The notes under the pieces: model-generated
What the model was told of the DNA's origin: nothing
The model's database searches: none
Seen by the model: the letters and a program-made list of their open reading frames with translations, nothing else
From: Bugula neritina
Taxonomy: Eukaryota; Animalia; Bryozoa
Assembly (NCBI GenBank): GCA_964035545.1
Contig: OZ037772.1
Span: 7,052,889-7,116,888, forward strand
Length of the DNA: 64,000 bases
Reading direction: 5' to 3'
Made by a program: the position numbers and the translations under genes
Shown: positions 8,240 to 45,600 of the stretch, in pieces
Position numbering within the stretch: the first letter of the stretch is position 1
Layout: each line of letters opens with the position of its first letter

Positions 8240-11200
8240 TCAGGTTGTTAATTTGAAAAGATACAGCTTTTTGTCATTCCAACCAGGTACAGCCAGTATT
8301 CCATCTCTGATACTCGGTTCTCCGGCAAATACAGTTGGTAACTTATCATGAGTCAGTGTCTTGAAAAGAGCACCTGTTTAATAAAAGCATAAAATACAGT
8401 GGTAATGATGTTGAATTACACTAAGTTTTATCCAGCAAAATAAAAACATCTGCTACATTATAGCAATACTCTAGGAACCAGGAATTATATTATTCATTCA
8501 ATGAAAGTTTGATATGTTACATAAAAAGAGTATTGAGTACACTTGCGCCACTAATTTTTATACTATAGTAATTATTGATTTCAGCAAAATTAGTGTTTTT
8601 TCCGACTTAAGTTTGGCTCAAAGCTCATATCTAATACACTTTAATTTATCCATCTCTTGTATTCAGGGGTTCTCACTTGTTTCTACATATTTTATCTATA
8701 ATACCTGCATAATATATCCTAATTGAATTTTATTACAAACCGTACCTGATGGAGAAATGATGTGAAGGGATTTCAAGCCTTTTCCAGAAACATAGATGAA
8801 ACCAGTAGAGTCTGCACAGACACTGTATCCATCTGTTACACCATCAAATCTCCATACTGTAGTCAGCTCACCGTTCTTTACTTTGTACTTCGTCAGTTTC
8901 CCTCCACTCACTCCTAGCAGATGACTATCTGGTAGAAAGTGTAGACCAAATGGATACACATTAGGATGAACAGTCTCTGTCTGTTTAGTGATGAAGTCAT
9001 AGATGATCAGCTGTTTAGTATCTGGATTCTTTACCACCACATGTCTGTCGGAGACTGCCATTACTGCTGGTACACCAAGACCTGTTCTATCAAACTGAAA
9101 CAGTTGTTGTCTCTTTGTGATGTCACCAGTTAAACACATCTCTACCTTAGATATGTCACCTTCTCTGTGTAGAATGAAGACATTCTGAGGAGTTTCAATC
9201 ACTCCTGTTACTCTCTTCTCACTTTTACTGTATTCACTCAGCTCATTACCATCTCTACTCAGTAACTGTATTCCATTATGAGTACCTATGAGTATGTCAC
9301 CATCTTGTCTGTGATTGGCTGAGTAACAGCAATCATCTATCTCATGTTCAGATATGAATGTCAGTGAAGAAGGAACTGTTACTAGACTGATGTTCAGCAG
9401 TCTACTTGCGTCCTCACCTTCAATATATGATGTAAAACTGGTCATTTATGTATGTATGCATCTGACAAGTCATTCTTATGCAAAATAATGTTGCAAGCTT
9501 ATTTTAAATTTATTAAGTAGACTAGCAACTTTGAAAATAATAGTTTAACCTAGTTTTTACAGCATGCTTTTCAAATTATTATTCAAATTGAAAGCCGTCT
9601 ACAGTTTTGGTATTATCAACATTTATAAAAAATTTAAAACATCACTGTCTCATTGTTATAATATATTGTGGTTTTATATTATCATTGTCATATAGCAGTA
9701 ACTCAGTTAAATTTATAATAATCTGTATCTGTTTTTGGTTACATTGACAAAGAAGATTTTGTTCATAAAAAGAAAATATTGCAGATGTTATGACTGCTAG
9801 TTTTCAGCAAAAGATTCTAACATAGAGGTTGACCAAGAATGAAACAATTGTATTCCATATCACATGTGCTCATGCAGCAACAACACTTCACTGTTGTACT
9901 CTATATCCCAAGATATGATGTATACTCAAGTATTATTGAACACTAGTGTAATAAGCACATTTTCATCAAGTGATATTGGTTTACTATATAAAATGCCTAG
10001 CAGATCACACACACTGCACTTAGGTTGTTATTCTAACATGTCTTTAGGAGTTAAGTAATTTTTCCTTAAGTGAGCAGTTAATTTATTTGATAAGCTTCGC
10101 TTGTATATAGTTGCAGTTAGTAAATATCAAGTGCTTTGTTGAATATTATTTACATGCATAAGTTTTGCATTAAAACTTTTGAGCTGCAAACATTCTGAGC
10201 AATGACTATTTAACTTAATTGAGATCATTATTCAAATATCTGCAGGCTATATTATATATGCATACACTATAGTCTAATGTTTTGAACTATTTATGTTTAA
10301 ATTAATCTTTAGACAACTACTCTATAAATTCATTAAATTATTTTGCATATTTTATAGTCTTCGTATAATAAACCACAAGTAAAATATATTATATTCTCAT
10401 TGTAAAGGTGTAGTAGCAATCACTTTGTATACTTGGGCTCTCTCAGGCCTTGTGGTTGACAAGGATTATCTTTTTTTGCAACCAATTTTATACTGAGATA
10501 CCCTAATCAAAAATCTCACATTTATATCAATTGTAAATATAGAGTGTCAGCTGCAGGAAACCAAAAGTTAGTAGAAAATAAATTTTTACTCTTTATTTTT
10601 GGTTGCATAAATTCCTGTAATTTATATTTTATTTTTCATACACTAATATTTAAACCATCTGAATTTATAATTTTTATCCAAATTTTCTTAATGTAGACTT
10701 TATCAAACATAATTTATTTAGGTTTTACGACCTATTATAGATCTGAAAGACTTTAAACATCTAGAATAAAGAGCGGTGAAACAACTCTATACAGCACACT
10801 GACACATTCATGTATATTCTAGTGCAACTATGATTTTATATAAAAACAACCAAAATCTTATATTATTGGCTGATTTTGAAATAGTTGCAAGACAATAAAA
10901 AAGAAAATCCTGTAGCTGTGTCTGTCCTAACAGATTTTGATAACAGGAACTGAAACTATGCTGAGGTTACAATAACTAGCTAATTGTTCCCAGTCTACAC
11001 AGAGTTTTTGAATTGATAATTATTAATTTGTATTACCATTTTTGCTATATAGTCTATTCAGTAAATTACTGTGCAGGACCTGCCAGAATATGGAAGGAGA
11101 GAAATAAAATATAATTCACTAACAATATGCTTTATAACTTTATGACTTCATTAAAGAATTTTGAAATGAAGCAGATTTGCATAGCATACCTCTTATTTTT

Positions 11201-13990
11201 ATTTGAAAAAAAAAAACCTTTATATACCTCAGAATGGCAAAATAATAGTTTTCTGTGTTGACAGCACTTACCTGTCTGTATCAGAGTTGGTGGATCAGCA
11301 AGTTCACAATCATCAAGTTTATCCGCATCATGTCTCTCCAGCTCTTCTGTTATTCTCTTCTTCTGTCTGATCTTCTCAGTCACATGACCATCTTTTAGAA
11401 GACCAGTTAACTCAGCTTGAGTTTTTTTCAACCCATCTTCTTTTGTCATCAGCTTGGTGTGAAAGCCTTCAACCTTAGCTGTCATTTTTGCTTTGTGGTT
11501 TATAACTTTGTCTATCATCTCTTGACTCTCTTCTCTTATTCTTTGTATCTAAAATTGAGAATCAATTTTTTCACCATTTCTTGTCAGCTAGTTTCCAGAA
11601 CACTGAGCAAAGGATTCAATGTTGACAATAACCATTATATTATTGTCTCACAAATATATAAAGCATGAAGCTTCATATAGAGATTTGTAAATAGTGAATG
11701 CAACTATATTTGAAAGTGTCATGCAATCTGATCAAATTTCTGGCATGTTTATTGAAAACTTGTTTAGTAGATTTCAACATTGCCTAATTTCATGCATGCT
11801 TTTTTGCTCTGAGAAGGCTAATAATCTTATCATAATATGATTTGCCATTAGGTTATTCTTTGTTATGAAAAGAACATTTTTTTTTTCCTATTGAAATACT
11901 TTGAGAAAATAATTCCATAGAATGACTGTACCCACCATCTCATCTCTAACTCTTTCTATCTCTGCTGCCATGACTCCACATTTCTCTTCCTGAACATCCA
12001 AATCTCTCCATGCCTTCTTGTCCTGGGAATACACTTCATCTATCTTCTGTGATACTTTCTCTAGTTTACCTCTAAGATATTCATTTACTTCAACTTTCAG
12101 GGATGTGAGAGACTTGAAGTCATGTTGACCTCCATCTAAAATGTACAGCAATATCTTATCACAGCGTTATTTAATAATGACTGTATATATGAAAAGCTAT
12201 ATCTTACTCTATTTTTGACCAAAGTACATATGGTGTGATCTTGAAATAGAATTTTTGTCTTAGCTTGGATAATATGCACAGTGTTAGAGTTGTATATTGT
12301 ACCTTCCACACTGTAAATAATAAAGTGATGTCTTGAATAGAAAAAGTAAGCAAAACAATTGACTTCAAAATGTGTTCTTTTTAAAACAAAGAAAAACACC
12401 AGCACAATGTTTTATCTTTTTGAAATACTTATTTTTAATTTTAGCCATTTACAAAAAAAAGGAGAAAGAATATTTTTTCAATTCCTCATTTTCTGGAAGC
12501 CAAAACTAGTGCTACTCAGAAATTGTGAAGTGTTATAATGAACATCTCCATTGTGTTATCCACAAAATATGAAATATACCTCTATGGCACCACTAAACAT
12601 ATAGCTTTCCTTTCCATCATAATAATGACCAGAAGCTCTAACTACTTTTGAAACTCTGGCAGAATTTGCTCTTGCGTCATAAAAGTTCTCATATGCTCTA
12701 AGTAAATACTTGACTATTTTTTAAGTACAGATAATACAGAAATTTCCTATATATAACCCAACTATAGGTATTCTTGTCAGCTTTTTAAAATTCATCATTA
12801 TTTTATTAATATCCAATGTGAAGTAGTTAAAGGAACAAATTTTCACATGTGTTATAGTCAGCACAACAAATACAGCTAGTGATACTGTAAGAAGAACCAA
12901 ATTGCACTTCAACTTCTGTGGTTTATTAACAACTGCTCATTTACAGGTAATTTAGAGTAATTAACTTTCCTCTAATAGTTAGCAAGTTACTACAATATTA
13001 CCTGTACAGTCGTATCCGTCAATCTCACACTCAAAGCAGATCAGCTTATCACATTTCTTACAAGCTCTCACTAGAACCTCTTGATGATGTTCACATGTTG
13101 GTTTATCATAAGTAGCAGGTGATCTCTTGTAGACATCAATGTCCACTATTTTGTGAGAATCTCCATGAAGTTTGTTATGTACCTACAGAAAAAATTTTTA
13201 AACTGTTATGCCTGCATTATCCTAAACTAATTCTAATATTGTACATGAGCTATTTTAGATTTGAAGTAGTAAGAATATATACCTGCTGATGTTGAGTACA
13301 GAACATAACTTCACAGTTCACACAGTAACATGTAGCTATTTGACCTTGACATTCATGAGCTGTACAGTACAGAGTACCAGAATCACCAGTTTCTATGGTA
13401 ACCTTTGGTAAACCTTCAATCTCCAGTGATGCATACACTTCCCTGCAACATATTACTGAGTTAACTATAATACAGATTTTGAACAGTTGTGTGTGCAAGT
13501 CACTTCATGTATATAATATCTCGAAACTAACAGCAATCCTATAATCACTTGTTGACTCTGATTTGTTTGAAATGGGATTTTCTGATAAGGTACAATATTT
13601 CAAATTACTCAATGTAATTAAACAACTCACTCAGGGATATTTGGGTGTAGTAATTTCAAAAACTTTCAATAGAGCACAACTTTTTGTATTAAACTTTTAT
13701 CAGAGACTTCTCTCGTTTTTTCAAATACTGCTCCTGTACCCCTCCATACAGGTGCTTGGAAGATTATAGTATAACTTGTAATATATGAGCTATATATAAA
13801 ATGTGTAGGTTATACATAGTACTCACCCACAAGTAGGGCAGGTTACAGTTTTATGTTTACTGTAATGTCCTTGAATACAACTCAAACAGAATACATGCTG
13901 ACAAGGCAGCTCTCTTGGATCTCTTATATAATCCCTCTTAGAGACACAATAACCACACTCATACCATTCTGGTAGTTGCTCGGCAGCCAT
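8240..13990 (-). CDS. TRIM-family gene B, complete (~595 aa): RING, B-box1, B-box2, coiled coil, NHL/SGL-like beta-propeller
   Basis: Exons 13990-13827, 13442-13283, 13182-13002, 12135-11936, 11548-11272, 9417-8746, 8373-8240 (TGA). Total 1788 nt, all GT-AG, consistent phases. Confidence 0.92.
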
Positions 13991-14292
13991 CTTTAATTGC
14001 TTTATGAATCAAAAAGTTTGGGTAACTTTATAAGGTATAAAGACATTTGGTATTAAAGCGTTTATATACCATTACTTGTACAAAATACCAAGGCAACTGT
14101 GTTTATAACAAGTTGTAAAATTTGTTTATTAAAACAACCTTAAAGCACCTAACTTTTTATCATGAGAAAATCAAGCTCAGCAACTATAATAATCATACTA
14201 TAATAGTAACTATTATGCATTTTCTAATATTTATCATTAGGTTCTAGAGATCAGTTATATTTGGTTTTATTCTACATATTTCTAGCACTCAC

Positions 14293-16607: not shown

Positions 16608-17430
16608 TCAGTTCTCCTCATACTGCACTTCAAACAGACACAGCTTCTGATCACTCCAACAAGGTACAGCTAATATTCCATCTTGAAAACTGATTACTCC
16701 AACTAACTCTGGCAATTTGTCATGGACCAGCTTTTTGAGTAAAGTACCTGTAAAATACAGAGAATATATTTTTCAGGTTGCGTAAGCCATGCAGTGGTCT
16801 AAGCATTTCTGTAATTTTTAAACCCAATTTTTCATTATGATAGCTTCTTCATGTTTTGACTTGCTGCAGAGATTTTGTTTGATACTGTGGTTATTTTTAT
16901 GTTGAGGACATGAATCAAAGGTAGAGGTGGATTCTTGATTTTGCTTAAAATAAATATTTTTATATGAAAAATATCACCAACTCTGTAGCATGTTGAGTTA
17001 TCTGAATGACTTCAAATTAGTATGAGAGAGTAAATTACCCTCAGGTGAGATGATGTAAATGGCTTTGAAACCATCTGTTGCACCAACGTAGATGAGACCA
17101 TTAGAATCTGTACAGACACTGTAACCATCTGTTACACCATCACATGTCCAGACAGCAGTCAGCATTCCATTCTCTACTTTGTACTTTATCAGTTTATATC
17201 CATCAACTTCTAGCAGATGACCATCTGGTAGAAAGTGTAGACCAACTGGATACACATCAGGATGAATATTCTCTGTCTGTTTAGTGATGAAGTCATAGAT
17301 GATCAGCTGATTAGTATCTGGATGATTCACCACAACATATCTGTCAGAGACTGCCATTCCTGCTACACCAAGACCTGTTCTATCAAACTGAAACAGTTGT
17401 TTTCTCTTTGTGATGTCACCAGCTAAACAC
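16608..17430 (-). pseudogene. Orphan propeller cassette C': 5'-truncated exon 6 and intact terminal exon 7
   Basis: Propeller homology 17430-17039 ends abruptly in a CCA-rich tract with no homologous acceptor; donor intact. Exon 7 at 16747-16608 reads GTLLKKLVHDKLPELVG..FEVQYEEN*. Confidence 0.8.
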
Positions 17431-18532
17431 CACCACCACCGCTACCGCCACTGCCACCACCAATGCAACCAATTTAATCAATGCAACCACCAGCTACATA
17501 AAATGATGTACTGCACTATTATAGCACAAGCACTTATAACAAATGCTGCAAAGCATCTTACGTTAAAATATTATGGCTATACTTCATAGATTGAAAATAT
17601 ATTTATGTGAAAAGTAGTTGAGTACTGTATAGTATTAGAGCTAATAATTCAGATAATATTTATTTTTCCTGAAGTTATCTGCCCCTGCATACTCAGAATA
17701 TTTGTTTCTGTTGTGCTGTTATCACTTTTTCGTCAGCTATAGTTTAATCAGTTTATCTTGTCTTTGAACTTGTGCACTCCAACGATATTCTAGTAAAGCA
17801 CATGCTGCAAACCACCGAGGTCAAAGTGCATACATATAAGTTGTTTTTTCCAATATGCTTAAACCAAGTATCATTAAACAGAACTGTGATGTTTAGATAA
17901 TGATGATATTTATAAGTAAAAAGCTAAAGAAAGTTTAAAAAATTGTTCGATATATAATTCAGAAGAAAATCCCATATATAGAGTTGTGGCTCTATTTCAC
18001 TAATGACATGCAAAGACAATTTAGTTTTTATTGATTCCATAATTTGTGTAGAAACATGTCAACAGTCAATATTGCTAATAAGTTAGTTATTTGAAATCCA
18101 AAAATAAAACTTCCAACATTTGTGAAAAAATGATGAAACTAGCATTCTATGTTAAAAGTCGCCAGCAAACAGAGCAACCAGTTCATTATATTATATGGTC
18201 TATTGTGAGTGACAGCATAATATGTTTTTGCAGATGAAAAACGCATTTTATGTCTACAATTTTAAGCCCTGCGGTGAGCATATAAAACTAAAGCAGAAAC
18301 AAAAGTGGTATTCCGTATTTATATAAATGCTACAGAAAATAACTAGCAAATTAAAAAAAACAATATATTAGCGTTGTTAGATACATACTTTTTGTAAAAA
18401 TTTTGCTTCAACATTATTGGTTAATATATAAAATAACCAGTTGCATTGTTCTAAAATTTGGCTACAATTAGAAATAATTAAATATGTATTTGTTGCATTT
18501 TGGTTGTCAATCATCTTTTGTTATCAATTTCA

Positions 18533-21500
18533 TTATTTTGTATTTATTTTAAACAGACGCAGCATATTCTCACTCCAACAAGGTACAGCTAACATGTCAT
18601 CTTTCACACTGATAGCTCCAACAACCTTTGGTAGTTTGTCATGAATCAGTTTTCTGAGCAGTTTACCTACAAAACAATATTAATAATTTTGTTTTCGATA
18701 GCTGTTTCATGGCATGATTCATCTAATACAAACTAGGTCAAAGAGTCAGCCATCATAAAGTGCAGTAAATATAAGTATGTGCGGTTTTAAGAGAAATGTC
18801 ATATGTAATACATACGCTCTTACTTCCTCACAAATATACATATAAAGGAGTAATACTATGTGATAATTTTAAAAAAAAATTATGTATCAATTATCATATG
18901 ATCGGCCACTCAGCGTACTCTACATTAATCTCAGCAATATTTCCACAAAATTTTTTTATTTGCTTCATAAGTAAAATAAGAGCTGAAACTGATAGCAAAA
19001 AACATCAACATAATTATGTGGTATAAAATGGATAGTCTATACCTATACAAATGAGTGAGTGAATACAGAGGTGGCATGCAAAAAGTAGGGAGGGATATTT
19101 TACTGCAGCTTTAATTATATATTATATAATAGTATAAATTCAATGCAATAATTTTCAAAACATAATCTTACCCATTGGAGAGATAATGTAGCATGTTTTT
19201 ATGTTGTCTGCGAAAACATAGATGAGACCATCAGAATCTGCACAGACACTGTAACCATCTGTTACATCATCACATGTCCAGACTGTAGTCAGCTCTCCAT
19301 TCTCTACTTTGTACTTCATGAGTTTGTCTCCACCAGCTCCTAGCAGATGACCATCTGGTAGAAAGTGTAGACCAACTGGATACACATTAGGATGAATAGT
19401 CTCTGTATGTTTAGTGATGAAGTCATAGATGATCAGCTGTGTGGTATCTGGATGACTTGCCACAACATATCTGTCAGAGACTGCCATTACTGCTACACCA
19501 AGACCTGTTCTATCAAACTGAAACAGTTGTTGTCTCTTTGTGATGTCACCAGTTAAACACATCTCTACCTTAGATATGTCACCTTCTCTGTGTAGAATGA
19601 AGACATTCTGAGGAGTCTCAATCACTCCTGTTACTCTCTTCTCACTTGTACTGTATTCACTCAGCTCATTACCATCTCTACTCAATAACTCTATTCTATT
19701 AGCAGTACCTATGAGTATGTCACCATCTTGTCTGTGATGAGCTACCACACACTGACCATCTGTCTCATGTTCAGATATGAATGTCAGTGAAGAAGGAAAT
19801 GTTACTAGACTGACATTCAACAGTCTACTTGTGTTTTGACCTGTAAAATGCTATATAGTGTTAATCACTTAATATGTTTATTAGAAATCAATTTTTATTA
19901 GAAAGTATATTTTATTTTTTCAAAAATGTTTCCTGATTTTATGATGGTTAGAATAAATCTATAAATAAGAAAATGAGATAATCATCTGATGTAATTGCTA
20001 CAAAAGTTGTACATTTTTGCTTATATATGCTTGTAATTATTAAAGATTAAATACATGTGTGTACATGCATATAATGTGCATGTCAGGTATATGCGTATGT
20101 ACTGCAGTATGTATTTATGTATGTGTTTAAATGTGTGTGTGCGTGTGCACTTCGTATAATATAGTAATGCATATAATGGTTTGGCAGGAGATATTAAGTT
20201 AAAACGCTGCTCGTCATATACAACGAAAAAATAATAATTTATTGATACTGTAATTTTTTAACTTCAATAAACAAACTGCAAAGTGAATTATCGACATGAT
20301 TTAAAGTAAAAGTTATTGTCATGCAGTAGAGGCTACACATGGAATGTAATGACTAACAGTTGTAGGTCTCTAGCAGCTTCTTTGAGAAATAATTATGGTC
20401 TTTCAGCATATATAGTGTGCGAATATAATTTGCTGCTCAATGCAGCATATAATTGTATGTAGGTAGTGATATAAAATACATATTACTTCATCGTTTATAA
20501 TGTACCATAATAATATTTGGTAAGTCATCATTTTGAGAGAGCCAACTAACTGGCAGATGTTCTCTAATTGTTATAGTCAAGATATTTTCGAAAATAAAAA
20601 CTTCACAAACCTGTATTAATTACAGTTGGTGGATCAATAAGTTCACAATCATCCAGTTTTTCTGCATCATGTCTGTTCATCTCTTCTGTTATTCTCTTCT
20701 TCTGTCTGATCTTCTCAGTCACATGACCATCTTTCAGCAGACGATGTACCTCAGCTTGTGTCTTCTCCAACCCATCTTTCTTCAGCATCAGCTTGTTGTA
20801 GAAATCTTCCACTTGATTGGTCACCTTAGCCTTGTGGTTTATAACTCTGTCAATCAGCTCTTGACTCTCATTAGTTAGTCTTTGGATCTAAAATGTTGCT
20901 GCTGTGTAAACAAGATATGCATTTCAAAAAACAATTTAATTGGTTTATATGTTTATATGAACGAATTTTGACTTAATTACATTTTCAGCTTGTTTTAAAG
21001 CTCAGACTTTATATCGCAAACTTTGATCATTTCAAAGAAAAGTTCTTTAATCGCAGAAAATTTTAATTTTCAGTGAGAAATGATTCTTTTAATATTTATA
21101 CAGGTCTTTCTGTCTAATTTGAAAATATTTAGCAAAAATACAAAATCTCTGGAGATGAAATGTTCAATTTGAATTTATACATTTCTGGATTAGTTTCTAC
21201 TGAAGGGTTTATTGAGAAAGTTTGTTTGGGTTCAGTGAAGATACTTTTTTTTCACCCACAAAACTTCCATTTTAGTTTATTGGCTAACAATGAATAGTTT
21301 TTTAGTTGTCACAAATAAATTCTGCATTCTAGTATATGTATGAAGCATTTATTCCTGTATTTTATAAGTGTTGCTGTCTAATTTTAGAATATAGTATCAT
21401 GGTAATCAATTTTCAAGAACAAATCACCATTAATTGTTATATATTAAAAAGATGCAAAATATACTATTACAAATAATTTATTATCACTTTGTTTAGTAAG

Positions 21501-23743
21501 CCAAACTTGTGTGAAGTTTTATATAGCTATTACGGATTTCAAAGACCTAATAAGAATATATATAAATATGCAAGATAGCGATATTAAATTTATTACACAT
21601 TGTTAATGTTGACCTAAATTTTTTTCTAAAGTTTAATCATTTGAGGATACGTACACTTTCAAAAATGTTGGTGTTTTAAAAATGAATCACAAAAAGAAAC
21701 TACAACTACACAGGATAGTTAAGGGCATCCTCACTAAGAATATCATAAATTTCTCCCAAAATGTAGTTTAGGTTCTTGAATAATACTACTCTGCGGGTGG
21801 CATGCGTGTTGCCTACTTGCAATTGTTTAGCCTAAGATCAAACTACAACCAATAAGCAGCAACCTTCATTAGGGCTGCGTTATCTATCAACATTCCATTA
21901 TAGGAGCTACATAAACAAAGTACCAAGCAAGCTATTCATTATAGCCTGCCAGCTAGCAAGCCTGTAATTAGCATGTACGCGCCAATATCTTCTCATCCCT
22001 ACGTGCTCATTGAAGCGTGAAGCACTGCGCGCTGCTAATTTACTATGAAAAAATATGGCATTTTCAGTGTATAAATCACCAATTTGTGGGCAATCTAGAA
22101 GAGTTATTGGAAAAAGAAAAAAACTTACCCTGGAGAAATATCTCAGGATTCCAGCAGTGCAATTTTCATTCAGATATCATGCTTTGCTGCTGAGATATTT
22201 TACTGGTACTGAAAAGTCAGCTTTTCAGGCAAAATTGGCCAAAATTGGGCAGTTTTTTGTCTATAACTTTGCAAAAAAAATTAAAATTGAAATTTCCAAA
22301 AAAGTTACCCTGGAGAAAAAGAAGATCTACAGCATAGTTTTTAAATTTTGACTCTAGCACAATTAGGTGAGATTTTATTTTACTGGTACTGAATTCTTAT
22401 ATGATTACAATGCAAACCTCAGCAAGGCAGTTGCAGCTAAAAAGTTGCCCTTAACTATCCTGTGTAACCACTCACCATCTCATCTCTAACTGTCTCTATC
22501 TCTTTTATAACATCTGAACATTTCTGTTCTTGATCATCAAGATCATTCCAAACTTTCTTGTCCAAAGAACTTATCTTGGTAATCTTTTCAGCAATTACTT
22601 TCAGCTGACTGGAAAAGTAGGTGTTCACCTCTTCTTTCAGTGATGTGAGAGATTTAAAATCATGTTTTTCTTGATCTAGAAAAAGAAATATAATGCTGAA
22701 TGTATAGTAATCAATCAGAAACTGAATGCCAAAATTTACATACAAACAGCAAACAAAGCTCATCACCCTATATATACTGCATTTCCATTTTTAGTATTTT
22801 TGACACCCAGCAAAACGTAAAAGGAAAGTGTCTAGTATAAATTTCCATCACTAACTTGCGAACATCTTAAGTAATTGATTATTCATTTAAGTATAACTGT
22901 AAAGTAAATTATTTAAGAGCAGTTTGGCTGGAGCTAGGGCTTATCAAACCTGAATCATAAATTTGTCAAATAGTCTTGTAAATCTACACAACAACAGCAT
23001 GAGCTCATAGGAAGTTTTCACAAAATACTGTTAAATTGAAAGATAAACTGCATTGCTAACACAATTTGTTTTTAGCTGCACTACACACTTAATGTTCATC
23101 TACAGATCAGTAAATGACAAAAAATCTGGCAGCTTTAGCTTTATAATGATTTTAGCTTATTAAGATAAGCTGCAAAAACTATAATATAGCAATTTTGTTA
23201 TTTATTTTAAGTGAAATTACTCTGTATTTTAACCATGGAGCAATACTTTTAATTTTATTTTTCTGTTTTATATGTGAACACTATGTTACATACTTGTGCA
23301 GTCATATCCGTCAATCTCACACTCAAAGCAGATCAGTTTGTCACATTTCTTACAAGCTCTCACGAGAACCTCTTGATGATGTTCACATGTTGGTTTATCA
23401 TAGCTAGCAGGTGATCTCTTGTAGACATCAATGTCCACTTCTTTGTGAGACTCACCATAAATTAGTTTGTGTGCCTAAAATTGAAAAAAACTTTGTTGGA
23501 ATCTAACATGAATAGGTAACCACATAACTCCAATATTTTTATTTGAAGCAGCATCAAAAGTGGGAAATTAAAAAAATGTAAAAGAAAGTTGACACACAAT
23601 GCACATATACATATATAATTGCACAAATGTCTCCACATATACATGCTCTTGTGCATTTGCATGTGTTTGTGCATGTGTGTGTGCATGTGTGTAGCAATTG
23701 TGTATAATTCACATACTATATAGGTGTGTGTGCGTGTGTGTAT

Positions 23744-23774
<31 letters not shown>

Positions 23775-31800: not shown

Positions 31801-33494
31801 GTTGCACTGGGAAAAAAAAGAAGATCTATAACATAGTTTTTAAATTTTGACTCTAGCACAATTAAGTGAGATTTTATTTTACTAGCACTGAATTCTTATA
31901 TGATCACAATGCAACCTCAGCAAGGCAGTTGCAGCTAAAAGGTTGCCCTTAACTCTCTTGTGTATATGACGAGAAGCGTTTTACCTTAATATCTCCTGCA
32001 AAACCACTATATGCATTAGTATATTATACAAAGTGCACATACGCACACACACATTTAAACACATACATAAATACATACTGCAGTACATACACATATACCT
32101 GACATGCATATTATATGCATGTACACACACAGGTTAGACATATATGTATAATTATAATCCGTATTAATTACAGGCATATATAAGCAAAAATGTACAAAAT
32201 TTGTAGCAATTACATCACATGATTATTTCATTTTCTTATTTATAGACTTATTCTAACCATCATAACATCAGGAAACATTTTTGAAAAGATAAAATAAACT
32301 TTCTAATAAAAATTGATTTCTAATAAACATATTAAATGATAAACACTATATATCTTTTACAGGTCAAAACACAAGTAGACTGTTGAATGTCAGTCTAGTA
32401 ACAGTTCCTTCTTCACTGACATTCATATCTGAATATGAGACAGATGGTTGGTGTGTGGTAGCTCATCACAGACAAGATGGTGACATACTCATAGGTACTG
32501 ATAATGGAATACAGTTACTGAGTAGAGATGGTAATGAGCTGAGTGAATACAGTACAAGTGAGAAGGTAGTAACAGGAGTGATTGAGACCCCTCAAAATGC
32601 ATTCATTCTACACAGAGAAGGTGACATATCTAAGGTAGAGATGTGTTTAGCTGGTGACATAACAAAGAGACAACAGCTGTTTCAGTTTGATAGAACAAGT
32701 GCTATTGCAGCATTAATGGCAGTTTCTGACAGATATGTTGTGGTGAATCATCCAGATACTGAACAGCTGATCATCTATGACTTCATCACTAAACAGAAAG
32801 AGACTATTCATCCTGATGTGTATCCATTTGGTCTACACTTTCTACCAGATGGTCATCTGCTAGGAACTGGTGGAGGTGAACTGATAAAGTACAAAGTAGG
32901 GAATGGAGAGCTGACTACAGTCTGGACATGTGAAGATTTAACAAGTGGATACAGTATTTGTACTGATTCTAATGGTCTCATCTATGTTTCTGGTTGGAAC
33001 TTGAAGTCGCTTTACATCATTTCTCCATCAGGTACGGTTGCTCAAGCATGTGTATATTGTGAGTAGAAAACTCGAAATATATTTTTATAGTTCATCAGAG
33101 GTGTTAGAAATGTCTAAGAATATTAGCAAAGCATATATTGAAAGTCTTTGAAATACTGTTTTCTGCTGCATCAAATTACTGTCTCCATAATATAGTCACA
33201 TTGCTGGAATCTAATTTTGAGTATCCCCACATTTTTTCAAATAATTTACAAACCTTGTCTATAAATTATGAAGTAAATTGAGTGCATTTTGATAATTTTT
33301 TTATAAACCTTCTAGCTTACTTCATTCCCAATGCAGTGTATATTTTTAAATAATAAACAGGTGTTCTTCTCAAGACACTGACTCATGATAAGTTACCATC
33401 TCTATTTGCTGGAGTACCGAGTATCAGAGATGGAATACTGGCTGTACCTGGTTGGGAAGATGAGAAGTTCTATCTTTTTAAAATAGAAACCTAA
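28819..33494 (+). pseudogene. 5'-truncated TRIM paralog D (no RING or B-box1, partial B-box2; intact coiled-coil and propeller exons)
   Basis: Exon 3 remnant 28819-28891. Open exons 29504-29703, 30538-30814, 32363-33031, 33361-33494 (TAA). Homology to gene C (inverted) starts at ~28691; no RING exon between 28031 and 28691. Confidence 0.78.
31203..31962 (+). mobile_element. CACAG-ended MITE, copy 2
   Basis: Same TIRs (right one degenerate), TA duplication. Empty site in gene F intron 5 (ttcgttgTAtatgacg, ~63483-63498) and in gene C. Confidence 0.9.
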
Positions 33495-35989: not shown

Positions 35990-37126
35990 GTCAAAACACA
36001 AGTAGACTACTGAATGTCAGTCTAGTAACAGTTCCTTCTTTACTGACATTCATATCTGAACATGAGACAAGTGGGTCATGTTACTCAGCCAATCACAGGC
36101 AAGATGGTGACATACTCATAAGTACTGTTAATGGAATACAGTTACTGAGTAGAGATGATAATGAGCTGAGTGAATACAGTACAAGTGAGAAGATAGTAAC
36201 AGCGGTAATTGAAACTCCTCAGAATGTCTTCATTCTACACAGAGAAGGTGAGGTAGATAAGGTAGACATGTGTTTAGCTGGTGACATCACAAAGAAACTA
36301 CAACTGTTTCAGTTTGATAGAACAGGTTATGGCGCAACAGTAATGGCAGTCTCTGACAGACATGTTGTGGTGAATCATCCAGATACTGAACAGCTGATCA
36401 TCTATGACTTCATCACTAAACAGACAGCGAATATTCATCCTGATGCCTTGCCACTTGGTCTACACTTTCTACCAGATGGTCATCTGCTAGAAGCTGGTGG
36501 AGATAAACTGATAAAGTACAAAGTAGAGAATGGAATGCTGACTGCTGTCTGGGCATGTGATGGTGTAACAGGTGGATACAGTGTCTGTGCAGATTCCAAT
36601 ATTCTCATCTATGTTTCTGGATTGAACTTGAAGTCCCTTCACATTATTTCTCCATCAGGTACGGTTGCTTAAGCATGTGTATGTTGTGAGTAGAAAACTT
36701 CAAATATATTTTTAAAATTCATCAAAAGTGTTAGAAATGTTGAAAAATATTACCAAAGCATATATTGAGAGTTTTTTGAAATACTGTTTTATAGCTGCTG
36801 CATCAAATTACTGTGTCCATAATATAGTCACACTGCTGGAATCTAAGTTTGTGTATCCCCACATTTTTTCATATAATTCACAAACCTTGTCTATAAATTA
36901 TGAAGTAAATTGAGTGCATTTTGATAATCTTTTTATAAACCTTCTAGCTTACTTTGTTCCCAATGCAGTGTATATTTTTAAATATTAAACAGGTGTTCTT
37001 CTCAAGACACTGACTCATGATAAGTTACCATCTCTATTTGCTGGAGTACCAAGTATCAGAGATGGAATACTGGCTGTACCTGGTTGGGATGAGAAGAAGT
37101 TGTATCTTTTTAAAATAGAAACCTAA
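35990..37126 (+). CDS. Duplicated intact propeller cassette D' (exons 6 and 7 only)
   Basis: Exons 35990-36658 (669 nt, open, AG/GT intact) and 36993-37126 (TAA). No upstream RBCC exons of its own. Flanks ~34276-37890 repeat ~31030-34275. Confidence 0.8.
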
Positions 37127-39357: not shown

Positions 39358-39653
39358 TTAAACTTAAAAATGATTTCTTTTTTATATTCTAGTTCATTTC
39401 TTGTAAAATTTAGCTTTAAACTTATATTTATGCTCTGGTGATGAGCTATTCATACGTTTTTCCTACAGATTGTCTATTTTAATGTTGATATTTAATTTTT
39501 GATTTAGTTTTATAAAACTATATAAATAATTCTCACATCAACTATATAACAGAAAACAATGATGTGTATCTTTTGCAGTCTATATAGCTTGCTTGTTTCC
39601 TCTCCAAAATTCTAAAGCTACTCATCTATACTTGAAACTAAAATGTAATCAAG

Positions 39654-42600
39654 ATGGCTGCCTGGCAACTACCAGAATGGTATGAGTGTGGTTATTGTGT
39701 CTCTAAGAGGGATGACATGAGAGATCCAAGAGAGCTGCCTTGTCACCATGTATTCTGTTTGAGTTGTATTCAAGGACATTACAGTAAACATAGAACTGTG
39801 ACTTGCCCTATTAAAACTTGTGGGTAAGTACTATGTATATACTGATAATGTCTCTAAAGTATTTATGTCATAGTCATACTAATAACAAAAAAGTTTTTAA
39901 TTGTTTTCGCAAAACTGTGTTAAACTTGAGCTATACTTTGCAAAAGGCTAAAATCTACTACCAAAAACATATAAGATTTAATTTTTCAGTGACATAGCAA
40001 ATTCAATTTGTTTATACAGGTCAGAAAAATTTATTTACTAGATTTTCTTTTCAAATATCCACATTAATCAATTTTAGAGAAGTGTATGACTCACTAGAGT
40101 TTGAAGGTTTACCAAAGGTTACCGTAGCAACTGGTGATTTTAGCACTATGTACTGTACTGCTCGTGGATGTCAAGGTCAAATAGCTACATGTTATTGTGT
40201 GACATGCAAAGACAAGTTCTGTTCTCAGCATCAGCAGGTAAGATAATATTCTTACTTTACCCCATTTTATATATATAGGGCGCAGAAGAAATAGTATTTA
40301 AAAACTATTTATAGTGCACTTTGATAAAATATTTGAAGTTATGTTTATAATTTTGTAACAATGTTGAGCGGCCATGTTTAAACTTGAAGTCTGAAAGATA
40401 ACAGCAAATAAAAAAAGTTTTAACAATACAGTTTTTCATTTCCCATTTGACCTTTATAACAAAACATTGTTTACATAGAGAATTACTCTTGACCGTTGTT
40501 TCAAAACTTATATATAACTGACTAAATTTTTCAATATTCAATTCAGAGAATTTTTTTCTCTTCCAAATGTATACGAGTTATATTTTAACAATAAGAAAAG
40601 TTATGGTTGAGTCCATCAAACAGCATTTCTACTGCTCATATCTTTATTCAAATTCTTTGCATATCAGCTGAAACAAGTATCTTTTAGATGAAGTTTGTTT
40701 TTTTAATTTTAAATGAAATGTTTAGCTTCTGCAGCATATGATGCTTTAAGAGGTTTGAAGCAGAATACATCTTTGACAGGATTTGTTCTATTATTGAACG
40801 TGCACTAAGTTATAGTAAGTCATTGACCGCACATGACAATTATGCAGTGCAAATTATACAACACACCTAATGTGTCAAGTGACCACATAAGTATAGCACA
40901 GGCGTTTAAAAAAAATCTGGTTTCTAACATCGCTACTAAAATTACTTCAAAAAATGTTATCTTATCATTCTAGGCACACAAAACACTGCACAATGATGTT
41001 CACAAAGTGGTAGACATTGATTCCTACAAGAGATCACCTGCTAGTTATGATAAGCCGACTTGTGAACATCATCAAGAAGTTCTAGTAAGAGCTTGTCAGA
41101 AATGTGACAGACTGATTTGCTTTGAGTGTGAGATTGATGGAGAAGACTGCACAGGTAATATTGTAGTAACTTACCAACCATTAGAGAAAAGTTAATTATT
41201 GTAAATTACCTGTTAAAGACTGCACAGGTAATATTTGGTAATTCACTGTTGAAAAATTGTTTCTAAAAACACTTCTTACAGAGGTGTGTCACTACATTCC
41301 CATAACTTCGAATGGATCCATACGTGTGCTTAGATGTATGCATTTGTGATTGCAGTTTGTATTAACTTATGGTTGTGGCATCATTAGGTGCAGCTGTTTT
41401 CAAACTATGCAAAAAAATTAATTTGCATAATGTGAAGCCTAAGATTGCAGTAATGCTTTAAACCACTCAGTTATCCTTTGTTTTCTAATAATAATATGAT
41501 AAGTTTTCACATGATCTTGTAGACACAAAATGATCAACAATTTAGTGCTTAAAGTAAAGATGGTTTTACTTATCTTTTAAGATTAGCCAGTCATTTTATG
41601 TATCCATGTATATAGTTTTCAAAATATTAAACAATTATTTTATGTATATTCATTGATCAAATTACTCTTAATCACTTGAACAAGGCTCATACACTGTCAT
41701 TTTATAATTAAATAATAATTTCCAGTTTCAACTTCTGACTGAACAAAAACTAATTCAACACTTGAGATTCTATATTGTTGTTAATTGGTTATAGCAAGTG
41801 TGGAGTTTATTCTAAACTATAATGTACATGCAATGGGCTACGCAAATGTATGATTAAACAAAAAATTAGTAAACGTATAACAGATAACTGCTGCCCGATC
41901 TTAATTTAATGAAATAATAATTAATGACATAAAACCTATTGTGACTTACAATTTAAATTACTTCAGTACCCTGGAAAAGTTTATATTGAATCTTGTCTCA
42001 ATAGAAGGTCAAATTATTGTATGATCAATAAATCTGCGTTAATAGCAGAGAAATATTTTATTTTGGTGCTTACCGAAAACAAACTTTGCTTGGTGAAACT
42101 TACATATGTTCAACACCTTAGACTGTTTTGAAACACTGCATTATGTAATCAAATCAAAATTTTAGATCAAGAGGGACATGATTTTAAATCTCTTACATCA
42201 CTGAGAGAAAAAGTCAATACTTACCTCGCGAGTCAGCTCAGTGTAATTGTTGAAAAGATTACCAAGATATGTACTTTGGACAAAAAGGTGTGGAATGATC
42301 TTGATGATCAAGAAGAAAAATGTTCAGACGTTATAAGAGAGATAGAGACAATTAGAGATGAAATGGTGAGTTTGTTATTTAACTGCCTTTTGAAATATCA
42401 TTGCTTGTTTTAAGTGTCATCACAATCATCACAATATTATTTACAATATTCAATTAGTTAGTATTGAAAGTGCCTGGAAACCACAACCATCATCATAATT
42501 ATTTTCATGTTTATGAGAGCATAAACAAACTAGTTGTATAGTAATTGTATAAATTAAATTATGGTTTGTTCAAAAAAGAAAATATTTGAAGACATGCAGA

Positions 42601-45600
42601 GTATGTAATATCACATTCGTTTTTTTATTTTGAGAGTAATAAGCAAAGGAATTATTTTTCAATTCGTTTCTGTGTTAAGCATCTTTTACAGAAAATCAGA
42701 AGTTACTTTTTTACAAGTGCTATAGATAAAATACATTTAAGTTATTTAAGGTTCAAATATTCTTTAACATGACAGCTATATAATATTCTTATCTGAGCTT
42801 TTAATGTTTATATATAGAGCTCAAAAATTTTGATTTTAGATCCAAAGAATAATCAATGAGAGCCAAGAACTGATTGGCAGAGTTATCAATCACAAAGAAG
42901 AAGTGACCAATCAGGTGGAAAATTTCTACAACGAGCTGATGCTGAAGAAAGATGGGTTGGAGAAAACACAAGCTGAGGTGCATTGTCTGCTGAAAAATGG
43001 TCATGTGACTGAGAAGATCAGAGAAAAGAAGAAAATTGCCAGAGAGGTGGAAAGGCATGATGTAGAAGATCTGGGTGATTGTAATCTCACTGATCTACCA
43101 ACCTTATTAGAAACAGGTTTGTGATGTTTTCATTTGACAATCAAAAAACATCTGCCGATTAGTCGGTTCTTTCAAAAAACGATTTGCAAAATATTTTCTG
43201 TCTTTCTCTCATTCTTTCAGTCAGTTGATACAAATGTGAATGTTTTACAACTGGTCTTGAGTTTGGTTGCAGCTCTTCACGCAACTCTGTTGTCAGTGGT
43301 CTGTTTCCAGGAACTCAAGTTGATTGATCTCTAGTTCATATTGCTCTCAGCAACATCTTTAAGCTTGAGTCTAGGTTGCCCTCTATTCCTTTTGCCATCG
43401 TTCAGCTGAGAGTAGAGCAATTTTCTTAGTAGCCAGCTATCTTCCTTCCTGTGCACATGGCTTACCAATTTTAGGTTATTTTCAAAAATAATGTCAGCCA
43501 TGCTTGGCAAGTTGTGACATCTTAGTATTTCTTCATTCCTAACTTTTTCATACCATTTTATAGCAAATGTCTCTAATTTGCCGCATCATGAAAGCGCTTA
43601 GCTTCTTCACTTGTATCCTGTATATTGTCCGTATTTCTGCTCTATACAGCAGACCTGAGAGCGCCATGAAGTGTTCTGTAGACTTTACACTTCATCCTTA
43701 TGGATACACGTCTGCTGTTCCGAAGTCTCTGCTGCAATTTTCCGTAAGCCACACTTGCTTTGCCCAGTCTGTTCGGCAGCTCTTTATCTATTCTTGCCGT
43801 ACAGGAAACAGTGCTTCCTAGATTAGTTCAAGTACAGCTGGTTCATCATCTATTTTATTAACCTCAGGTTTATATGGAGAGTGAATAAGTTTGATTGGTT
43901 GGTACATGCATCTACCTTCTATAAATGTTGATTTTTTATATTAGTACCTATACATACAATATCTTATGTGAGCAGTGAAATACATTTACACACTGTATAA
44001 GCTGAAAGATCATTTAGCTATTTCTCTAAAAAGCTGCTATAGACCCACAACTGTTAGTCATTACATTTTATGTGTAGCCACCACTGCAAGACAACAGATT
44101 TTATTTTAAATCATGATGGTAACTCACTTAACGGTTTGTTTATTGAAGTTGAAAAATTAAATTATAAATAAATTATTATTCTTCCTTTGTATGACAAGCA
44201 CCATAGTCATGCAGTCTGTTAATTTAATACTTTATAACAAACCTTTACATGTATTACTATGATGTACTATATATGTGCACACATATCACACATATATACA
44301 TGCATACACACATACATATAATATTATACTGTATATACATAAATACATAACAAGCATATATACATGTATGCATCTTATATTCACATATAACACACATAAA
44401 TTGCACATATGAACATATAATATGATAATTATAGGAGTTACAGACATATAATATAAGCAAAAATGTACAAAACTTATAGAAATTGCATCAGATACCCATC
44501 TAATTTTCTTAGTTTTAGGTTTTTGGTAACTATATCATAAAATCAGGAAAAGTTTTTGAGCAAACAAATGCTTTCTATAATAAAAAATTATTTCTAATGA
44601 ACAAACTAAATTATTTACTCTATATATCATCTTACAGGTCAAAACACAAGTAGACTGCTGAACATCAGTCTGGTAACAGTTCCTTCTTCACTGACATTCA
44701 TATATGAACATGAGACAAGTGATTGGTGTTACTCAGCCAATCACAGACAAGATGGTGACATACTCATAGGTATTGAAAAAGGAATACAGTTACTGAGTAG
44801 AGATGGTAATGAGCTCAGTGAATACAGTACAAGTGAGAAGAGAGTAACAGGACTAATTGAGACTCCTCAGAATGTCTTCATTCTACACAGACAAAGTGAC
44901 ATAGATAAAGTAGACATGTGTTTAGCTGGTGACATCACAAAGAGACAACAACTGTTTCAGTTTGATAGAACAGGTAACATTGGACCAGTACTGGCAGCCT
45001 CTGACAGACATGTTGTGGTGACTCATCCAGATACTGAACAGCTGATCATCTATGATTTCATCACTAAACAGACAGAGACTATTCATCCTGATGTGCATCT
45101 ACTTGGTCTACACTTTCTACCAGATGGTCATCTGCTAGGAGTTGGTAGAGGTAAACTGATAAAGTACAAAGTAGAGAATGGAAAGCTGACTACAGTCTGG
45201 ACATGTGATGGTGTAACAAGTGGATACAGTGTCTGTACAGACTCTAGTGGTCTCATCTATGTTTTTGCAGACAACATAAAAACATGCTATATTATATCTC
45301 CAATGGGTAAGAATCTGCTTTAAAAATCATTTTCTTGAATTTATACTGTTACATAATACTTAATTAAAGCTTTAGTAAAATATCTATCCCTACTTTCTGC
45401 ATACCACTTCTGTATTTACTCACTCATTTGTATAGATAAAGACTATCCATTATATACCACACAATTATGTTGGTGATTTTGCTATCAGTTTTAGCTCTTT
45501 TTTTACTCATGGAACAAATAAAAAAAATTTATGTACATATGGCTGAGATTCCTGCAGAGTATGCCGAGTGGCCAATCATATGATAATTAATATATAATTT

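What the first reader, a model, noticed from the sequence alone, without database searches (positions are those of the whole stretch)
8746..45306. Hypervariable patches on a constant framework in the propeller exon
Exon 6 of B/C/D/D'/E differs at the same short positions. After the conserved E(H/Y)E: IDDCCYSAN, TDGQCVVAH, TDGWCVVAH, TSGSCYSAN, TSDWCYSAN (F: TNGQCMSAH). After FDRT: GLGVPAV, GLGVAV, SAIAAL, GYGATV, GNIGPV. After HP: NVYPF, NVYPV, DVYPF, DALPL, DVHLL. After HLL: GVSGG, GAGGD, GTGGG, EAGGD, GVGRG. After IYV: SGKGL, FADNI, SGWNL, SGLNL, FADNI. Framework segments (HRQDGDILI, QLIIYDFITK, GLHFLPD) are invariant. The spacing suggests loops on one propeller face, the usual ligand face in NHL domains (inference).
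Basis: partly seen in the sequence, partly recalled or inferred. Interest (0 to 1): 0.82.

Follow-up and report, generated by a model that had tools for sequence, protein, structure and literature searches.

The report
Variable-faced propeller TRIM ligase gene array
A tandem array of at least 34 ubiquitin-ligase genes in an invertebrate (probably bryozoan) genome keeps the body of a six-bladed propeller domain almost identical but gives every copy a different set of loops on the ligand-binding face, much as antiviral TRIM gene families do in vertebrates with a different domain.

Summary

- **Gene type.** The genes encode RING, B-box, coiled-coil and a divergent NHL-type six-bladed beta-propeller. 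Exon 6 gives blades 1-5 and a 44-aa exon 7 most of blade 6.
- **Family size.** The genome holds at least 34 intact exon-6 copies across about 600 kb.
- **Where variation sits.** It lies in the bd-ba and bb-bc loops, the top face: 1.1-1.4 bits against 0.4-0.55 elsewhere, p=2e-6. All 34 top-face signatures differ. A second cluster of 10 copies varies in the same loops.
- **Excess of amino-acid change.**
  - M2a beats M1a with one tree (2dlnL 279), with 5 partition trees (87) and with 10 (39).
  - All six folded sites with P>0.95 lie in top loops.
  - Top loops taken as a class give omega about 1.3.
  - A test that lets synonymous rates vary between sites is only borderline (p=0.06).
- **Gene conversion.** It is pervasive (PHI z=-9.4). 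Exon 6 is homogenised relative to its introns.
- **Function.** Immune recognition is inference only.

A first-stage note (s1-444292) describes something similar 4.9 Mb away in this genome. I rate this a new variant of a known kind.

The parts
8746..9417 (-). Gene B exon 6 (propeller blades 1-5), phase 1-1, intact
   Evidence: tblastn and translation; splice sites; exon-only cover by RNA-labelled run X1
8240..8373 (-). Gene B exon 7 (strand d of blade 5 plus strands a-c of blade 6, and the stop), type I
   Evidence: tblastx and acceptor AAACAG|GT
11270..11485 (-). Gene B coiled-coil exon
   Evidence: RNA contigs and a CT..AC joint
12985..13149 (-). Gene B B-box exon
   Evidence: Pfam zf-B_box 25.0 bits, cutoff 24.1
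13826..13996 (-). Gene B RING exon
   Evidence: Pfam zf-RING_2 33.1 bits, cutoff 27.3
17031..17429 (-). Orphan truncated exon-6 copy (blades 3-5 only); an exon 7 follows near 16600-16750
19172..19840 (-). Gene C exon 6
18530..18666 (-). Gene C exon 7, type II
20606..24686 (-). Gene C upstream exons: coiled coil 20606-20824, B-box 23292-23438, RING 24516-24686
30601..30819 (+). Gene D coiled-coil exon. Only a B-box fragment (28819-28890) and no RING exon were found upstream
32363..33031 (+). Gene D exon 6, the copy that was modelled. Hot codons, with residue numbers counted from 32365: 29 (32449), 46 (32500), 68 (32566), 113 (32701), 128 (32746), 155 (32827), 171 (32875), 194 (32944), 211-215 (32995-33009)
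33361..33494 (+). Gene D exon 7, type I
35990..36658 (+). D' exon 6: a second intact cassette with no RING, B-box or coiled-coil exons of its own
36993..37126 (+). D' exon 7, type I
39648..43121 (+). Gene E upstream exons: RING 39648-39824 (two extra codons in the last Cys pair), B-box 41007-41192, coiled coil 42903-43121
44638..45306 (+). Gene E exon 6
45765..45892 (+). Gene E exon 7, type II (coordinates converted from locus L017)
59750..64000 (+). Gene F: RING 59750-59920, B-box 61020-61169, coiled coil 62900-63118, exon 6 from 63883 running off the window
1284..2847 (-). Gene A: RING 2680-2847 and B-box 1284-1454; the rest lies left of the window

Best explanation
The window is a slice of a large tandem array of TRIM-type E3 ubiquitin-ligase genes. 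Each gene encodes a RING, a B-box, a coiled coil and a divergent NHL-type six-bladed beta-propeller. A 669-nt phase 1-1 exon gives blades 1-5, and a 44-aa last exon gives most of blade 6. The N-terminal strand of exon 6 closes the ring.

Among paralogues the scaffold (strands and bottom-face turns) is nearly constant. Two things keep it so: purifying selection, and frequent short-tract gene conversion confined to the exon.

The loops of the top face (bd-ba and bb-bc) differ in every copy. A few positions there have changed residue repeatedly and faster than synonymous sites. These are above all the residue just before strand a and the bb-bc turn.

The most likely working model follows. Each paralogue is a ligase whose propeller top face recognises a different ligand. 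The array is then a germline-encoded repertoire of recognition modules coupled to ubiquitination. The top loops are acidic rather than basic, so protein ligands are more likely than RNA.

Shown: the anatomy, the fold, the placement of variability, the conversion, that members of the family appear to be transcribed, and the raised omega on the top face. Inferred: ligand binding by that face, and a role in recognising fast-evolving targets such as pathogens or mobile elements.
For: **Architecture.**
- RING and B-box pass Pfam thresholds.
- The exon order is repeated in six genes.
- The nearest named proteins are bryozoan 'TRIM25-like'.

**Fold.**
- pLDDT is 93.9 for exon 6 and 95.4 for the complete domain of a homologue, which has 6x4 strands.
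- Six-bladed YWTD, NHL, Pizza and PknD structures tie at Z 18.3-19.5.
- The family profile hits the TRIM3, TRIM2, Thin, TRIM71 and Brat NHL domains at E from 5e-20 to 6e-8. The match to TRIM3 runs repeat by repeat.

**Functional genes.**
- All 34 copies are open and keep their splice sites.
- Run X1 covers exons only and shows GT..AG-type joints.
- dN/dS is 0.22 for the RING, 0.12 for the B-box and 0.39 for the coiled-coil exon.

**Face-specific variability.**
- Entropy is higher in top loops.
- There are 34 distinct top-face signatures in 34 copies. Top loops have 14-27 variants each (bb-bc of blade 2 only 7), bottom loops 3-13.
- Exon 7 follows the same rule.
- A second cluster of 10 copies shows the same pattern. 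Per-site entropy correlates between clusters at rho=0.43, p=2e-10.

**Selection.**
- M1a versus M2a gives 2dlnL of 279 with one tree, 87 with 5 trees and 39 with 10 trees. M8a versus M8 gives 82.
- The codon code reproduces the iqtree M0 likelihood.
- The P>0.95 sites 29, 46, 68, 113, 155 and 212 are all in top loops.
- Top loops taken as an a-priori class give beta/alpha of 1.3 (LRT 5.4). Bottom loops give about 0.35 and strands 0.45.

**Conversion.**
- PHI gives z=-9.4.
- The nearest paralogue changes in almost every fifth of the exon.
- Four-fold sites differ by 10%, flanking introns by 38-48%.
Against: - With site-specific synonymous rates allowed, support for any beta>alpha class is borderline (2dlnL 10.7, parametric p=0.059).
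- Most hot sites are not individually significant.
- The tree-free dN/dS for top loops is 1.32, with a 95% interval of 0.88-2.12.
- At the 12 hottest codons, pS (0.45) is as high as pN (0.46) by Nei-Gojobori counting.
- In the second cluster, M2a is not significant once trees are partitioned.
- No window copy reaches Pfam's NHL threshold.
- I had no model coordinates, so 'top face' rests on strand order and on homology to NHL repeats, not on measured exposure.
- No ligand or expression response is known.
- The RNA evidence is from contigs of a run only guessed to be RNA. It cannot be assigned to single paralogues.
Confidence: 0.68

Rival explanations
1. Relaxed constraint only. The top-face loops are structurally free and drift neutrally (omega about 1). 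The bottom-face turns are tight D/N-G turns that the fold needs. No adaptive diversification and no ligand repertoire is involved.
For: - Pooled top-loop omega is only 1.3, and the tree-free interval includes 1.
- The dual-rate test gives p=0.059.
- The bottom loops are xDG/NG turns.
- The second cluster is not significant after partitioning.
Against: - M2a and M8 find a class with omega of 2.6-5, even with 5 or 10 separate trees.
- Sites 29 and 46 carry 6 and 11 residues, with beta about 10 against alpha about 2.5-3 and posterior probability rounding to 1.0.
- The hot site is the homologous position, just before strand a, in four of five blades.
- Drift alone does not explain why all 34 copies stay intact, nor why they differ on this face while the surrounding codons are being homogenised.
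Confidence: 0.2
2. Mosaic-age artefact. Gene conversion keeps resetting the scaffold to a young age, while the patches are old sequence that conversion has not overwritten. The apparent excess of amino-acid change would then reflect older coalescence rather than repeated substitution.
For: - Recombination signal is strong and the nearest neighbour changes along the exon.
- Exon four-fold divergence is 0.10, against intron divergence of 0.38-0.48.
- Hot codons have pS of 0.45, close to the intron level.
Against: - The islands are one to three codons wide. Codons within two positions of them have background pS (0.16 against 0.14), which is far shorter than plausible conversion tracts.
- Top loops as a whole have dS of 0.22, not intron-like.
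- Keeping such islands against conversion would itself need selection for diversity.
- The high pS at hot codons is expected from multi-step codon paths when 6-11 residues alternate (inference).
Confidence: 0.1
3. Decaying duplicates. The copies are pseudogenes or exon relics, and the variation is decay.
For: - Truncated copy at 17031-17429, and cassette D' without upstream exons.
- Two copies of the second cluster carry a stop.
Against: - There are no stops in any of the 34 copies of 223 codons, and all keep AG/GT splice sites.
- The scaffold has omega of 0.35-0.5.
- Exon-only cover in run X1.
Confidence: 0.02

Closest known systems
Fish multigene TRIM families (finTRIM/ftr, btr, trim35/hltr) and primate TRIM5/TRIM22 (class IV, B30.2)
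   Same: - The RING-B-box-coiled-coil ligase is duplicated into tandem multigene arrays.
- The C-terminal recognition domain shows hypervariable loops and positive selection under M1a/M2a and M7/M8, with recombination between copies (PMC3137616).
- The effector half is conserved.
   Different: - The recognition domain here is a six-bladed NHL-type propeller, not a B30.2/PRY-SPRY sandwich.
- The host is an invertebrate, and the closest named relatives are bryozoan.
- No antiviral or other function has been shown.
Canonical TRIM-NHL proteins (Brat, Mei-P26, Thin/TRIM32, TRIM2, TRIM3, TRIM71/LIN-41)
   Same: - Same domain order.
- Six-bladed propeller with Z 18.3-19 to the Brat, Thin, Mei-P26, TRIM2 and TRIM71 NHL domains.
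- The family profile matches TRIM3 NHL repeats one by one.
- The top face, formed by the bd-ba and bb-bc loops, is the ligand face (PMC4015489).
   Different: - Canonical members are single-copy, slowly evolving developmental regulators with a basic, RNA-binding top face.
- Here there are at least 34 and at least 10 copies in two clusters.
- The top loops are net acidic (mean -2, range -7 to +4).
- No filamin domain was seen in the domains I found.
- The window copies do not reach Pfam's NHL threshold.
Concerted evolution with diversified binding sites, as in MHC and other receptor arrays (from general knowledge)
   Same: Exon-limited gene conversion shuffles and homogenises copies while ligand-contact codons stay diverse.
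   Different: Here the comparison is between paralogues of one haploid assembly. Allelic polymorphism was not examined.

Membership tests
TRIM / RBCC E3 ligases | N-terminal RING finger | tested here: met
   zf-RING_2 33.1 bits (cutoff 27.3) and zf-C3HC4 31 bits (cutoff 21) for gene B; similar for gene F
TRIM / RBCC E3 ligases | B-box zinc finger after the RING | tested here: met
   zf-B_box 25.7 and 25.0 bits, cutoff 24.1, for genes E and B
TRIM / RBCC E3 ligases | Coiled coil after the B-box | tested here: inconclusive
   A conserved charged, heptad-like exon lies between the B-box and the propeller in five genes. There was no Pfam hit, and no coiled-coil predictor was run.
NHL-repeat propeller (Pfam PF01436; TRIM class VII) | Six-bladed beta-propeller of four-stranded blades | tested here: met
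   AF2 gives five blades in exon 6 and 24 strands in six blades for the complete homologous domain. Six-bladed NHL and YWTD structures come top at Z 18.3-19.5.
NHL-repeat propeller (Pfam PF01436; TRIM class VII) | Match to the Pfam NHL repeat model at its gathering score | tested here: not met
   No NHL hit for any window copy. Only 5 of 83 family members match NHL, the best at E 1.7e-5, and 4 match WD40.
NHL-repeat propeller (Pfam PF01436; TRIM class VII) | Sequence homology to solved TRIM-NHL domains | tested here: met
   The family profile hits TRIM3 at 5.5e-20, TRIM2 at 1.5e-15, Thin at 2.3e-14, TRIM71 at 3e-14 and Brat at 6e-8. It aligns to five successive NHL repeats of TRIM3. A repetitive bacterial WD40 protein scores higher (6.6e-29), so the signal is partly a generic propeller-repeat signal.
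NHL-repeat propeller (Pfam PF01436; TRIM class VII) | Electropositive top surface, as reported for TRIM-NHL RNA binders (PMC4015489) | tested here: not met
   Net charge of top-loop residues averages -2 (range -7 to +4) and that of the exon-6 fold averages -7. This is a crude residue count, not a surface potential.
Class IV TRIM (finTRIM / TRIM5-like) | C-terminal B30.2 (PRY-SPRY) domain | tested here: not met
   No SPRY or PRY hit was found, and the C-terminal domain is a propeller. The array works like these families but is not a member.
WD40 propellers | WD40 repeat signature and a fold of usually seven blades | tested here: not met
   No Pfam WD40 hit for the window copies. The domain has six blades. 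WD40 structures fall below the NHL and YWTD structures in the Z-ranked second look.

The most novel reading that the evidence does not exclude
This may be a lophotrochozoan counterpart of the vertebrate antiviral TRIM arrays, built on an NHL-type propeller instead of B30.2. On this reading, dozens of intracellular ligases each carry a unique top-face specificity. Exon-limited gene conversion keeps the scaffold uniform and shuffles loop variants, and spare exon-6/7 cassettes (D', the orphan copies) serve as alternative terminal exons or conversion donors. That would be an independently evolved, germline-diversified recognition system in a colonial animal. Its targets might be viruses, mobile elements such as the Polintons noted nearby by a first-stage note I did not check, symbionts, or allorecognition cues.
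Probability: 0.3. Interest if true: 0.75.

Novelty: new variant of a known kind. Interest (0 to 1): 0.6.

Why it matters
Expanded, fast-evolving TRIM families are a hallmark of vertebrate intrinsic immunity. In every described case that I found, the diversified module is the B30.2 domain.

Here the same evolutionary logic appears on a different fold and in a phylum whose immunity is almost unstudied. The logic is a conserved ligase half, tandem amplification, and a recognition surface diversified at homologous loop positions.

The case gives concrete, testable residues: one or two per blade on one face. It also offers a natural panel of at least 34 scaffold-identical, surface-different propellers for ligand discovery or binder engineering.

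It is also a clean example of exon-limited concerted evolution coexisting with maintained surface diversity.

Tried and rejected
**Searches that gave nothing decisive**
- Single-sequence searches of exon 6 found nothing significant in Pfam or among PDB sequences. A family profile was needed.
- Foldseek alone could not separate NHL from WD40 or Kelch. The Z-ranked second look could.
- Four literature searches found no description of a hypervariable NHL-type TRIM array or of bryozoan TRIM expansions. The library is partial, so this is not proof of absence.

**Steps I could not take**
- The spliced exon 6+7 protein of the window has no reference, so I did not fold it. I folded exon 6 alone and the complete domain of a Watersipora homologue instead.
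- Model coordinates are not returned, so I could not map solvent exposure or distances.

**Selection tests that fell short**
- Tree-free Nei-Gojobori dN/dS on structure-defined top loops gave 1.32, with an interval that includes 1.
- Per-site tests with free synonymous rates reached p<0.05 only at residues 2, 9, 46, 128, 170 and 182.
- The dual-rate mixture test gave p=0.059 against 50 simulations.
- In the second cluster, M2a was not significant with partitioned trees.

**RNA evidence**
- Only assembled contigs were available, from a run merely guessed to be RNA. Many contigs are 90-95% alike, so they are paralogues. This suggests the family is transcribed and spliced, but says nothing about which copy or how much.
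- Read laying was given 5951 letters.

**Side look**
- ORFs in the G+C-richer stretch at 47-52 kb have no Pfam hit. The stretch is a 3.78-kb direct duplication full of microsatellites.


Full report
**1. What is there**

The window is G000:C8:7052889-7116888 of a 216-Mb eukaryotic assembly with about 32% G+C.

tblastn with one propeller ORF finds seven copies in the window:
- B 8735-9445(-)
- a truncated copy at 17031-17429(-)
- C 19164-19862(-)
- D 32356-33042(+)
- D' 35962-36669(+)
- E 44625-45308(+)
- F from 63873(+), cut by the window end

[quoted passage not shown] They also belong to a gene A that runs off the left edge. D has only a B-box fragment and the coiled-coil exon. D' has no upstream exons of its own. 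RING and B-box pass Pfam's thresholds.

Alignment of the exon edges shows a conserved acceptor (ACAG|GT) and donor (G|GTAxG), both in phase 1. So the ORF ends seen by eye are intron read-through.

A further 44-aa exon lies 320-500 nt downstream of every copy. It comes in two sequence types. Type II travels with the ..KTCYIISPMG end of exon 6.

**2. Size of the family**

The assembly holds at least 34 intact exon-6 copies, 70-86% identical, on C8 between 6.63 and 7.21 Mb. A second cluster of about 12 copies at 9.31-9.42 Mb is 47-58% identical, and there are a few more distant copies.

All 34 main-array copies are open over their full length and keep AG/GT splice sites.

Outside this genome, the exhaustive protein search gives 80 clusters at E<1e-10. 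Most of these are single-exon ORFs from unannotated contigs. The only named ones are Watersipora subatra (Bryozoa) proteins, among them 'E3 ubiquitin/ISG15 ligase TRIM25-like', about 33% identical and with the same RING-B-box-propeller order. That the host is a bryozoan is an inference from this and from the run labels.

**3. Fold and family**

Single sequences hit nothing significant in Pfam or among PDB sequences.

AlphaFold2 with an 83-row alignment models exon 6 of D at pLDDT 93.9 as five four-stranded blades. The complete domain of the Watersipora homologue models at pLDDT 95.4 with 24 strands. That is six blades, the N-terminal strand closing blade 6.

Foldseek returns propellers of all kinds, with the Thin NHL domain first. 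The Z-ranked second look puts six-bladed YWTD, Pizza, PknD and the Brat, Thin, Mei-P26, TRIM2 and TRIM71 NHL domains together at Z 18.3-19.5.

A profile of the family hits TRIM3 (5.5e-20), TRIM2, Thin, TRIM71 and Brat NHL domains. It aligns to five successive NHL repeats of TRIM3. This fixes which strand is a, b and c. A repetitive bacterial WD40 protein scores higher still, and a few family members touch Pfam WD40 as well as NHL.

I therefore call it a divergent NHL-type propeller. It meets the NHL definition at profile and fold level but not at Pfam's threshold.

**4. Where the variation lies**

Using the model's strands, I classed residues 18-222 of exon 6 as strands, bd-ba and bb-bc loops, or ba-bb and bc-bd loops. 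The Brat paper defines the first pair of loops as the top surface and the second as the bottom (PMC4015489).

| Class | Mean entropy over 34 copies (bits) |
|---|---|
| bd-ba loops (top) | 1.13 |
| bb-bc loops (top) | 1.37 |
| ba-bb loops (bottom) | 0.39 |
| bc-bd loops (bottom) | 0.55 |
| strands | 0.42-0.52 |

- Top versus bottom loops gives p=1.9e-6.
- Entropy is periodic with a peak at lag 41 residues (p=0.008).
- All 34 copies have a unique top-face signature.
- Top loops have 14-27 distinct variants each, with bb-bc of blade 2 at only 7. Bottom loops have 3-13, mostly one dominant form.
- Exon 7 obeys the same rule. PSIRDGILAVPGW is invariant, while the residues after KLP and after GW vary.
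- In the independent second cluster the same loops are the variable ones (top versus bottom p=0.003). Per-site entropy correlates between the clusters at rho=0.43, p=2e-10.

Because alternate loops of a beta-meander lie on one side, 'one face' does not depend on how the strands are named.

**5. Is there an excess of amino-acid change?**

Whole-exon pairwise dN/dS is about 0.66. For comparison it is 0.22 for the RING, 0.12 for the B-box and 0.39 for the coiled-coil exon.

I wrote a Goldman-Yang site-model likelihood. It reproduces iqtree's M0 likelihood exactly at -7702.34.

| Trees | Comparison | 2dlnL | Selected class |
|---|---|---|---|
| one tree | M1a vs M2a | 279 | omega 4.9, 7% of sites |
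| five partition trees | M1a vs M2a | 87 | omega 2.9, 9% of sites |
| five partition trees | M8a vs M8 | 82 | omega 2.6, 13% of sites |
| ten partition trees | M1a vs M2a | 39 | omega 5, sites 29 and 46 |

Sites with P>0.95 under the five-tree M2a are residues 2, 29, 46, 68, 113, 155 and 212. The six that lie in the fold are all in top loops, against none of 161 other sites (Fisher p=7e-5). Residues 29, 68, 155 and 194 are the position immediately before strand a in blades 1, 2, 4 and 5. Residue 194 reaches only P=0.82.

Taking top loops as a class defined by structure rather than by variability:
- the tree-free estimate is 1.32 (0.88-2.12), against 0.49 for bottom loops and 0.51 for strands;
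- the likelihood estimate is beta/alpha=1.3 (LRT 5.4), against 0.35 and 0.45.

The weak side of the case:
- With site-specific synonymous rates, only residues 2, 9, 46, 128, 170 and 182 reach p<0.05 singly.
- A grid mixture gives 2dlnL of 10.7 for any beta>alpha mass, with posteriors above 0.9 at 2, 29, 46, 155 and 182.
- Against 50 simulations under the fitted null, this is p=0.059.
- Nei-Gojobori counting at the 12 hottest codons gives pS 0.45, about equal to pN 0.46. Multi-step codon paths inflate pS there (inference).

My reading is that face-specific acceleration is certain. Omega>1 is likely at a handful of sites. Much of the rest of the top face is near neutral.

**6. Gene conversion**

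The PHI test is far outside its permutations (z=-9.4). Giving each fifth of the exon its own tree raises the M0 likelihood by about 1200 units. For nearly every window copy, the nearest paralogue is a different gene in each 132-nt fifth.

Four-fold sites of exon 6 differ by 10% on average, whereas the 60-160 nt of intron on either side differ by 38-48%, close to saturation for this composition. Synonymous divergence is also higher in the B-box (0.55) and coiled-coil (0.34) exons than in exon 6 (0.18-0.20), though that rests on five genes.

The 'constant framework' is thus partly a product of exon-limited concerted evolution. This agrees with a first-stage note on a neighbouring window (s1-446013).

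The hot islands are only one to three codons wide, and codons within two positions have background pS. This argues that they are renewed by substitution rather than merely spared by conversion.

**7. Expression**

One run labelled 'METAGENOMIC RNA-Seq, symbiont metagenome' covers the exons of the gene B region and none of its introns. It shows joints with CT..AC ends, which are GT..AG on the gene's strand. A second run, not on record as RNA, covers exons and introns alike, as DNA would.

These are contigs, many of them 90-95% alike. They suggest the family is transcribed and spliced, but say nothing about which copies or at what level.

**8. How it most likely works**

- Shown: a ligase half under purifying selection is joined to a propeller whose top face differs in every paralogue.
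- Known: the top face is the ligand surface of NHL propellers, binding RNA in Brat and the protein Pumilio in earlier genetics (PMC4015489).
- Inferred: each paralogue recognises a different ligand and ubiquitinates it or a bound partner.
- The top loops are net acidic (mean -2), unlike the basic RNA-binding face of canonical TRIM-NHL proteins. Protein ligands therefore seem more likely.
- An immune or other non-self recognition role is proposed only by analogy with finTRIM, btr, trim35 and TRIM5. In those, tandem TRIM arrays show positive selection in B30.2 loops and recombination between copies (PMC3137616).

**9. Novelty**

I found no description of a diversified NHL-type TRIM array or of bryozoan TRIM expansions in four full-text searches.

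The kind is known: tandem TRIM arrays with a diversified recognition domain. The fold of the diversified module, the phylum, and the combination with exon-limited homogenisation are new. I therefore rate it a new variant of a known kind.

Noticed in passing
window 32363-37126: Two complete exon-6 + exon-7 cassettes (D and D') lie in tandem behind a single coiled-coil exon. They are separated by a long (CA)n-type microsatellite at 34365-35199. Both exons are phase 1-1 and intact, so mutually exclusive use is possible.
   Followed up: partly
window 16600-17429 (-): An orphan truncated exon 6 (blades 3-5 only) with its own exon 7 lies between genes B and C. The genome search shows similar truncated copies at G000:C8:7017712-7018107 and 7004486-7004836.
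   Followed up: partly
exon 7 of all copies (e.g. window 33361-33494 versus 18530-18666): Exon 7 is dimorphic. Type I (22 copies) and type II (10 copies) are only about 45-55% identical. Type II is linked to the ..KTCYIISPMG/K end of exon 6. This looks like an old 3' haplotype block that recombines with different 5' parts.
   Followed up: partly
window 39648-39824 (+): The RING exon of gene E has two extra codons inside the last Cys pair (CPIKTC instead of CPTC). This may impair zinc binding.
   Followed up: no
window 28819-28890 (+): Gene D keeps only a fragment of the B-box exon, and no RING exon was found upstream. D may be a 5'-truncated gene or may use distant exons.
   Followed up: no
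window 46482-52488: A direct duplication of about 3.78 kb (46482-48707 versus 50265-52488, 99-100% identical in the blocks compared), full of short tandem repeats. Its ORFs have no Pfam match.
   Followed up: partly
window 24649-25290 and 59400-59700: Long (TC)n/(GA)n microsatellites lie immediately upstream of the RING exons of genes C and F.
   Followed up: no
G000:C8:9309000-9416838; C7:8122034-8148368; C9:488142-488822; C2:26505782-26530387: Further clusters of the same propeller exon at lower identity (27-58%). Two copies in the C8 9.3-Mb cluster carry one in-frame TAG each.
   Followed up: partly
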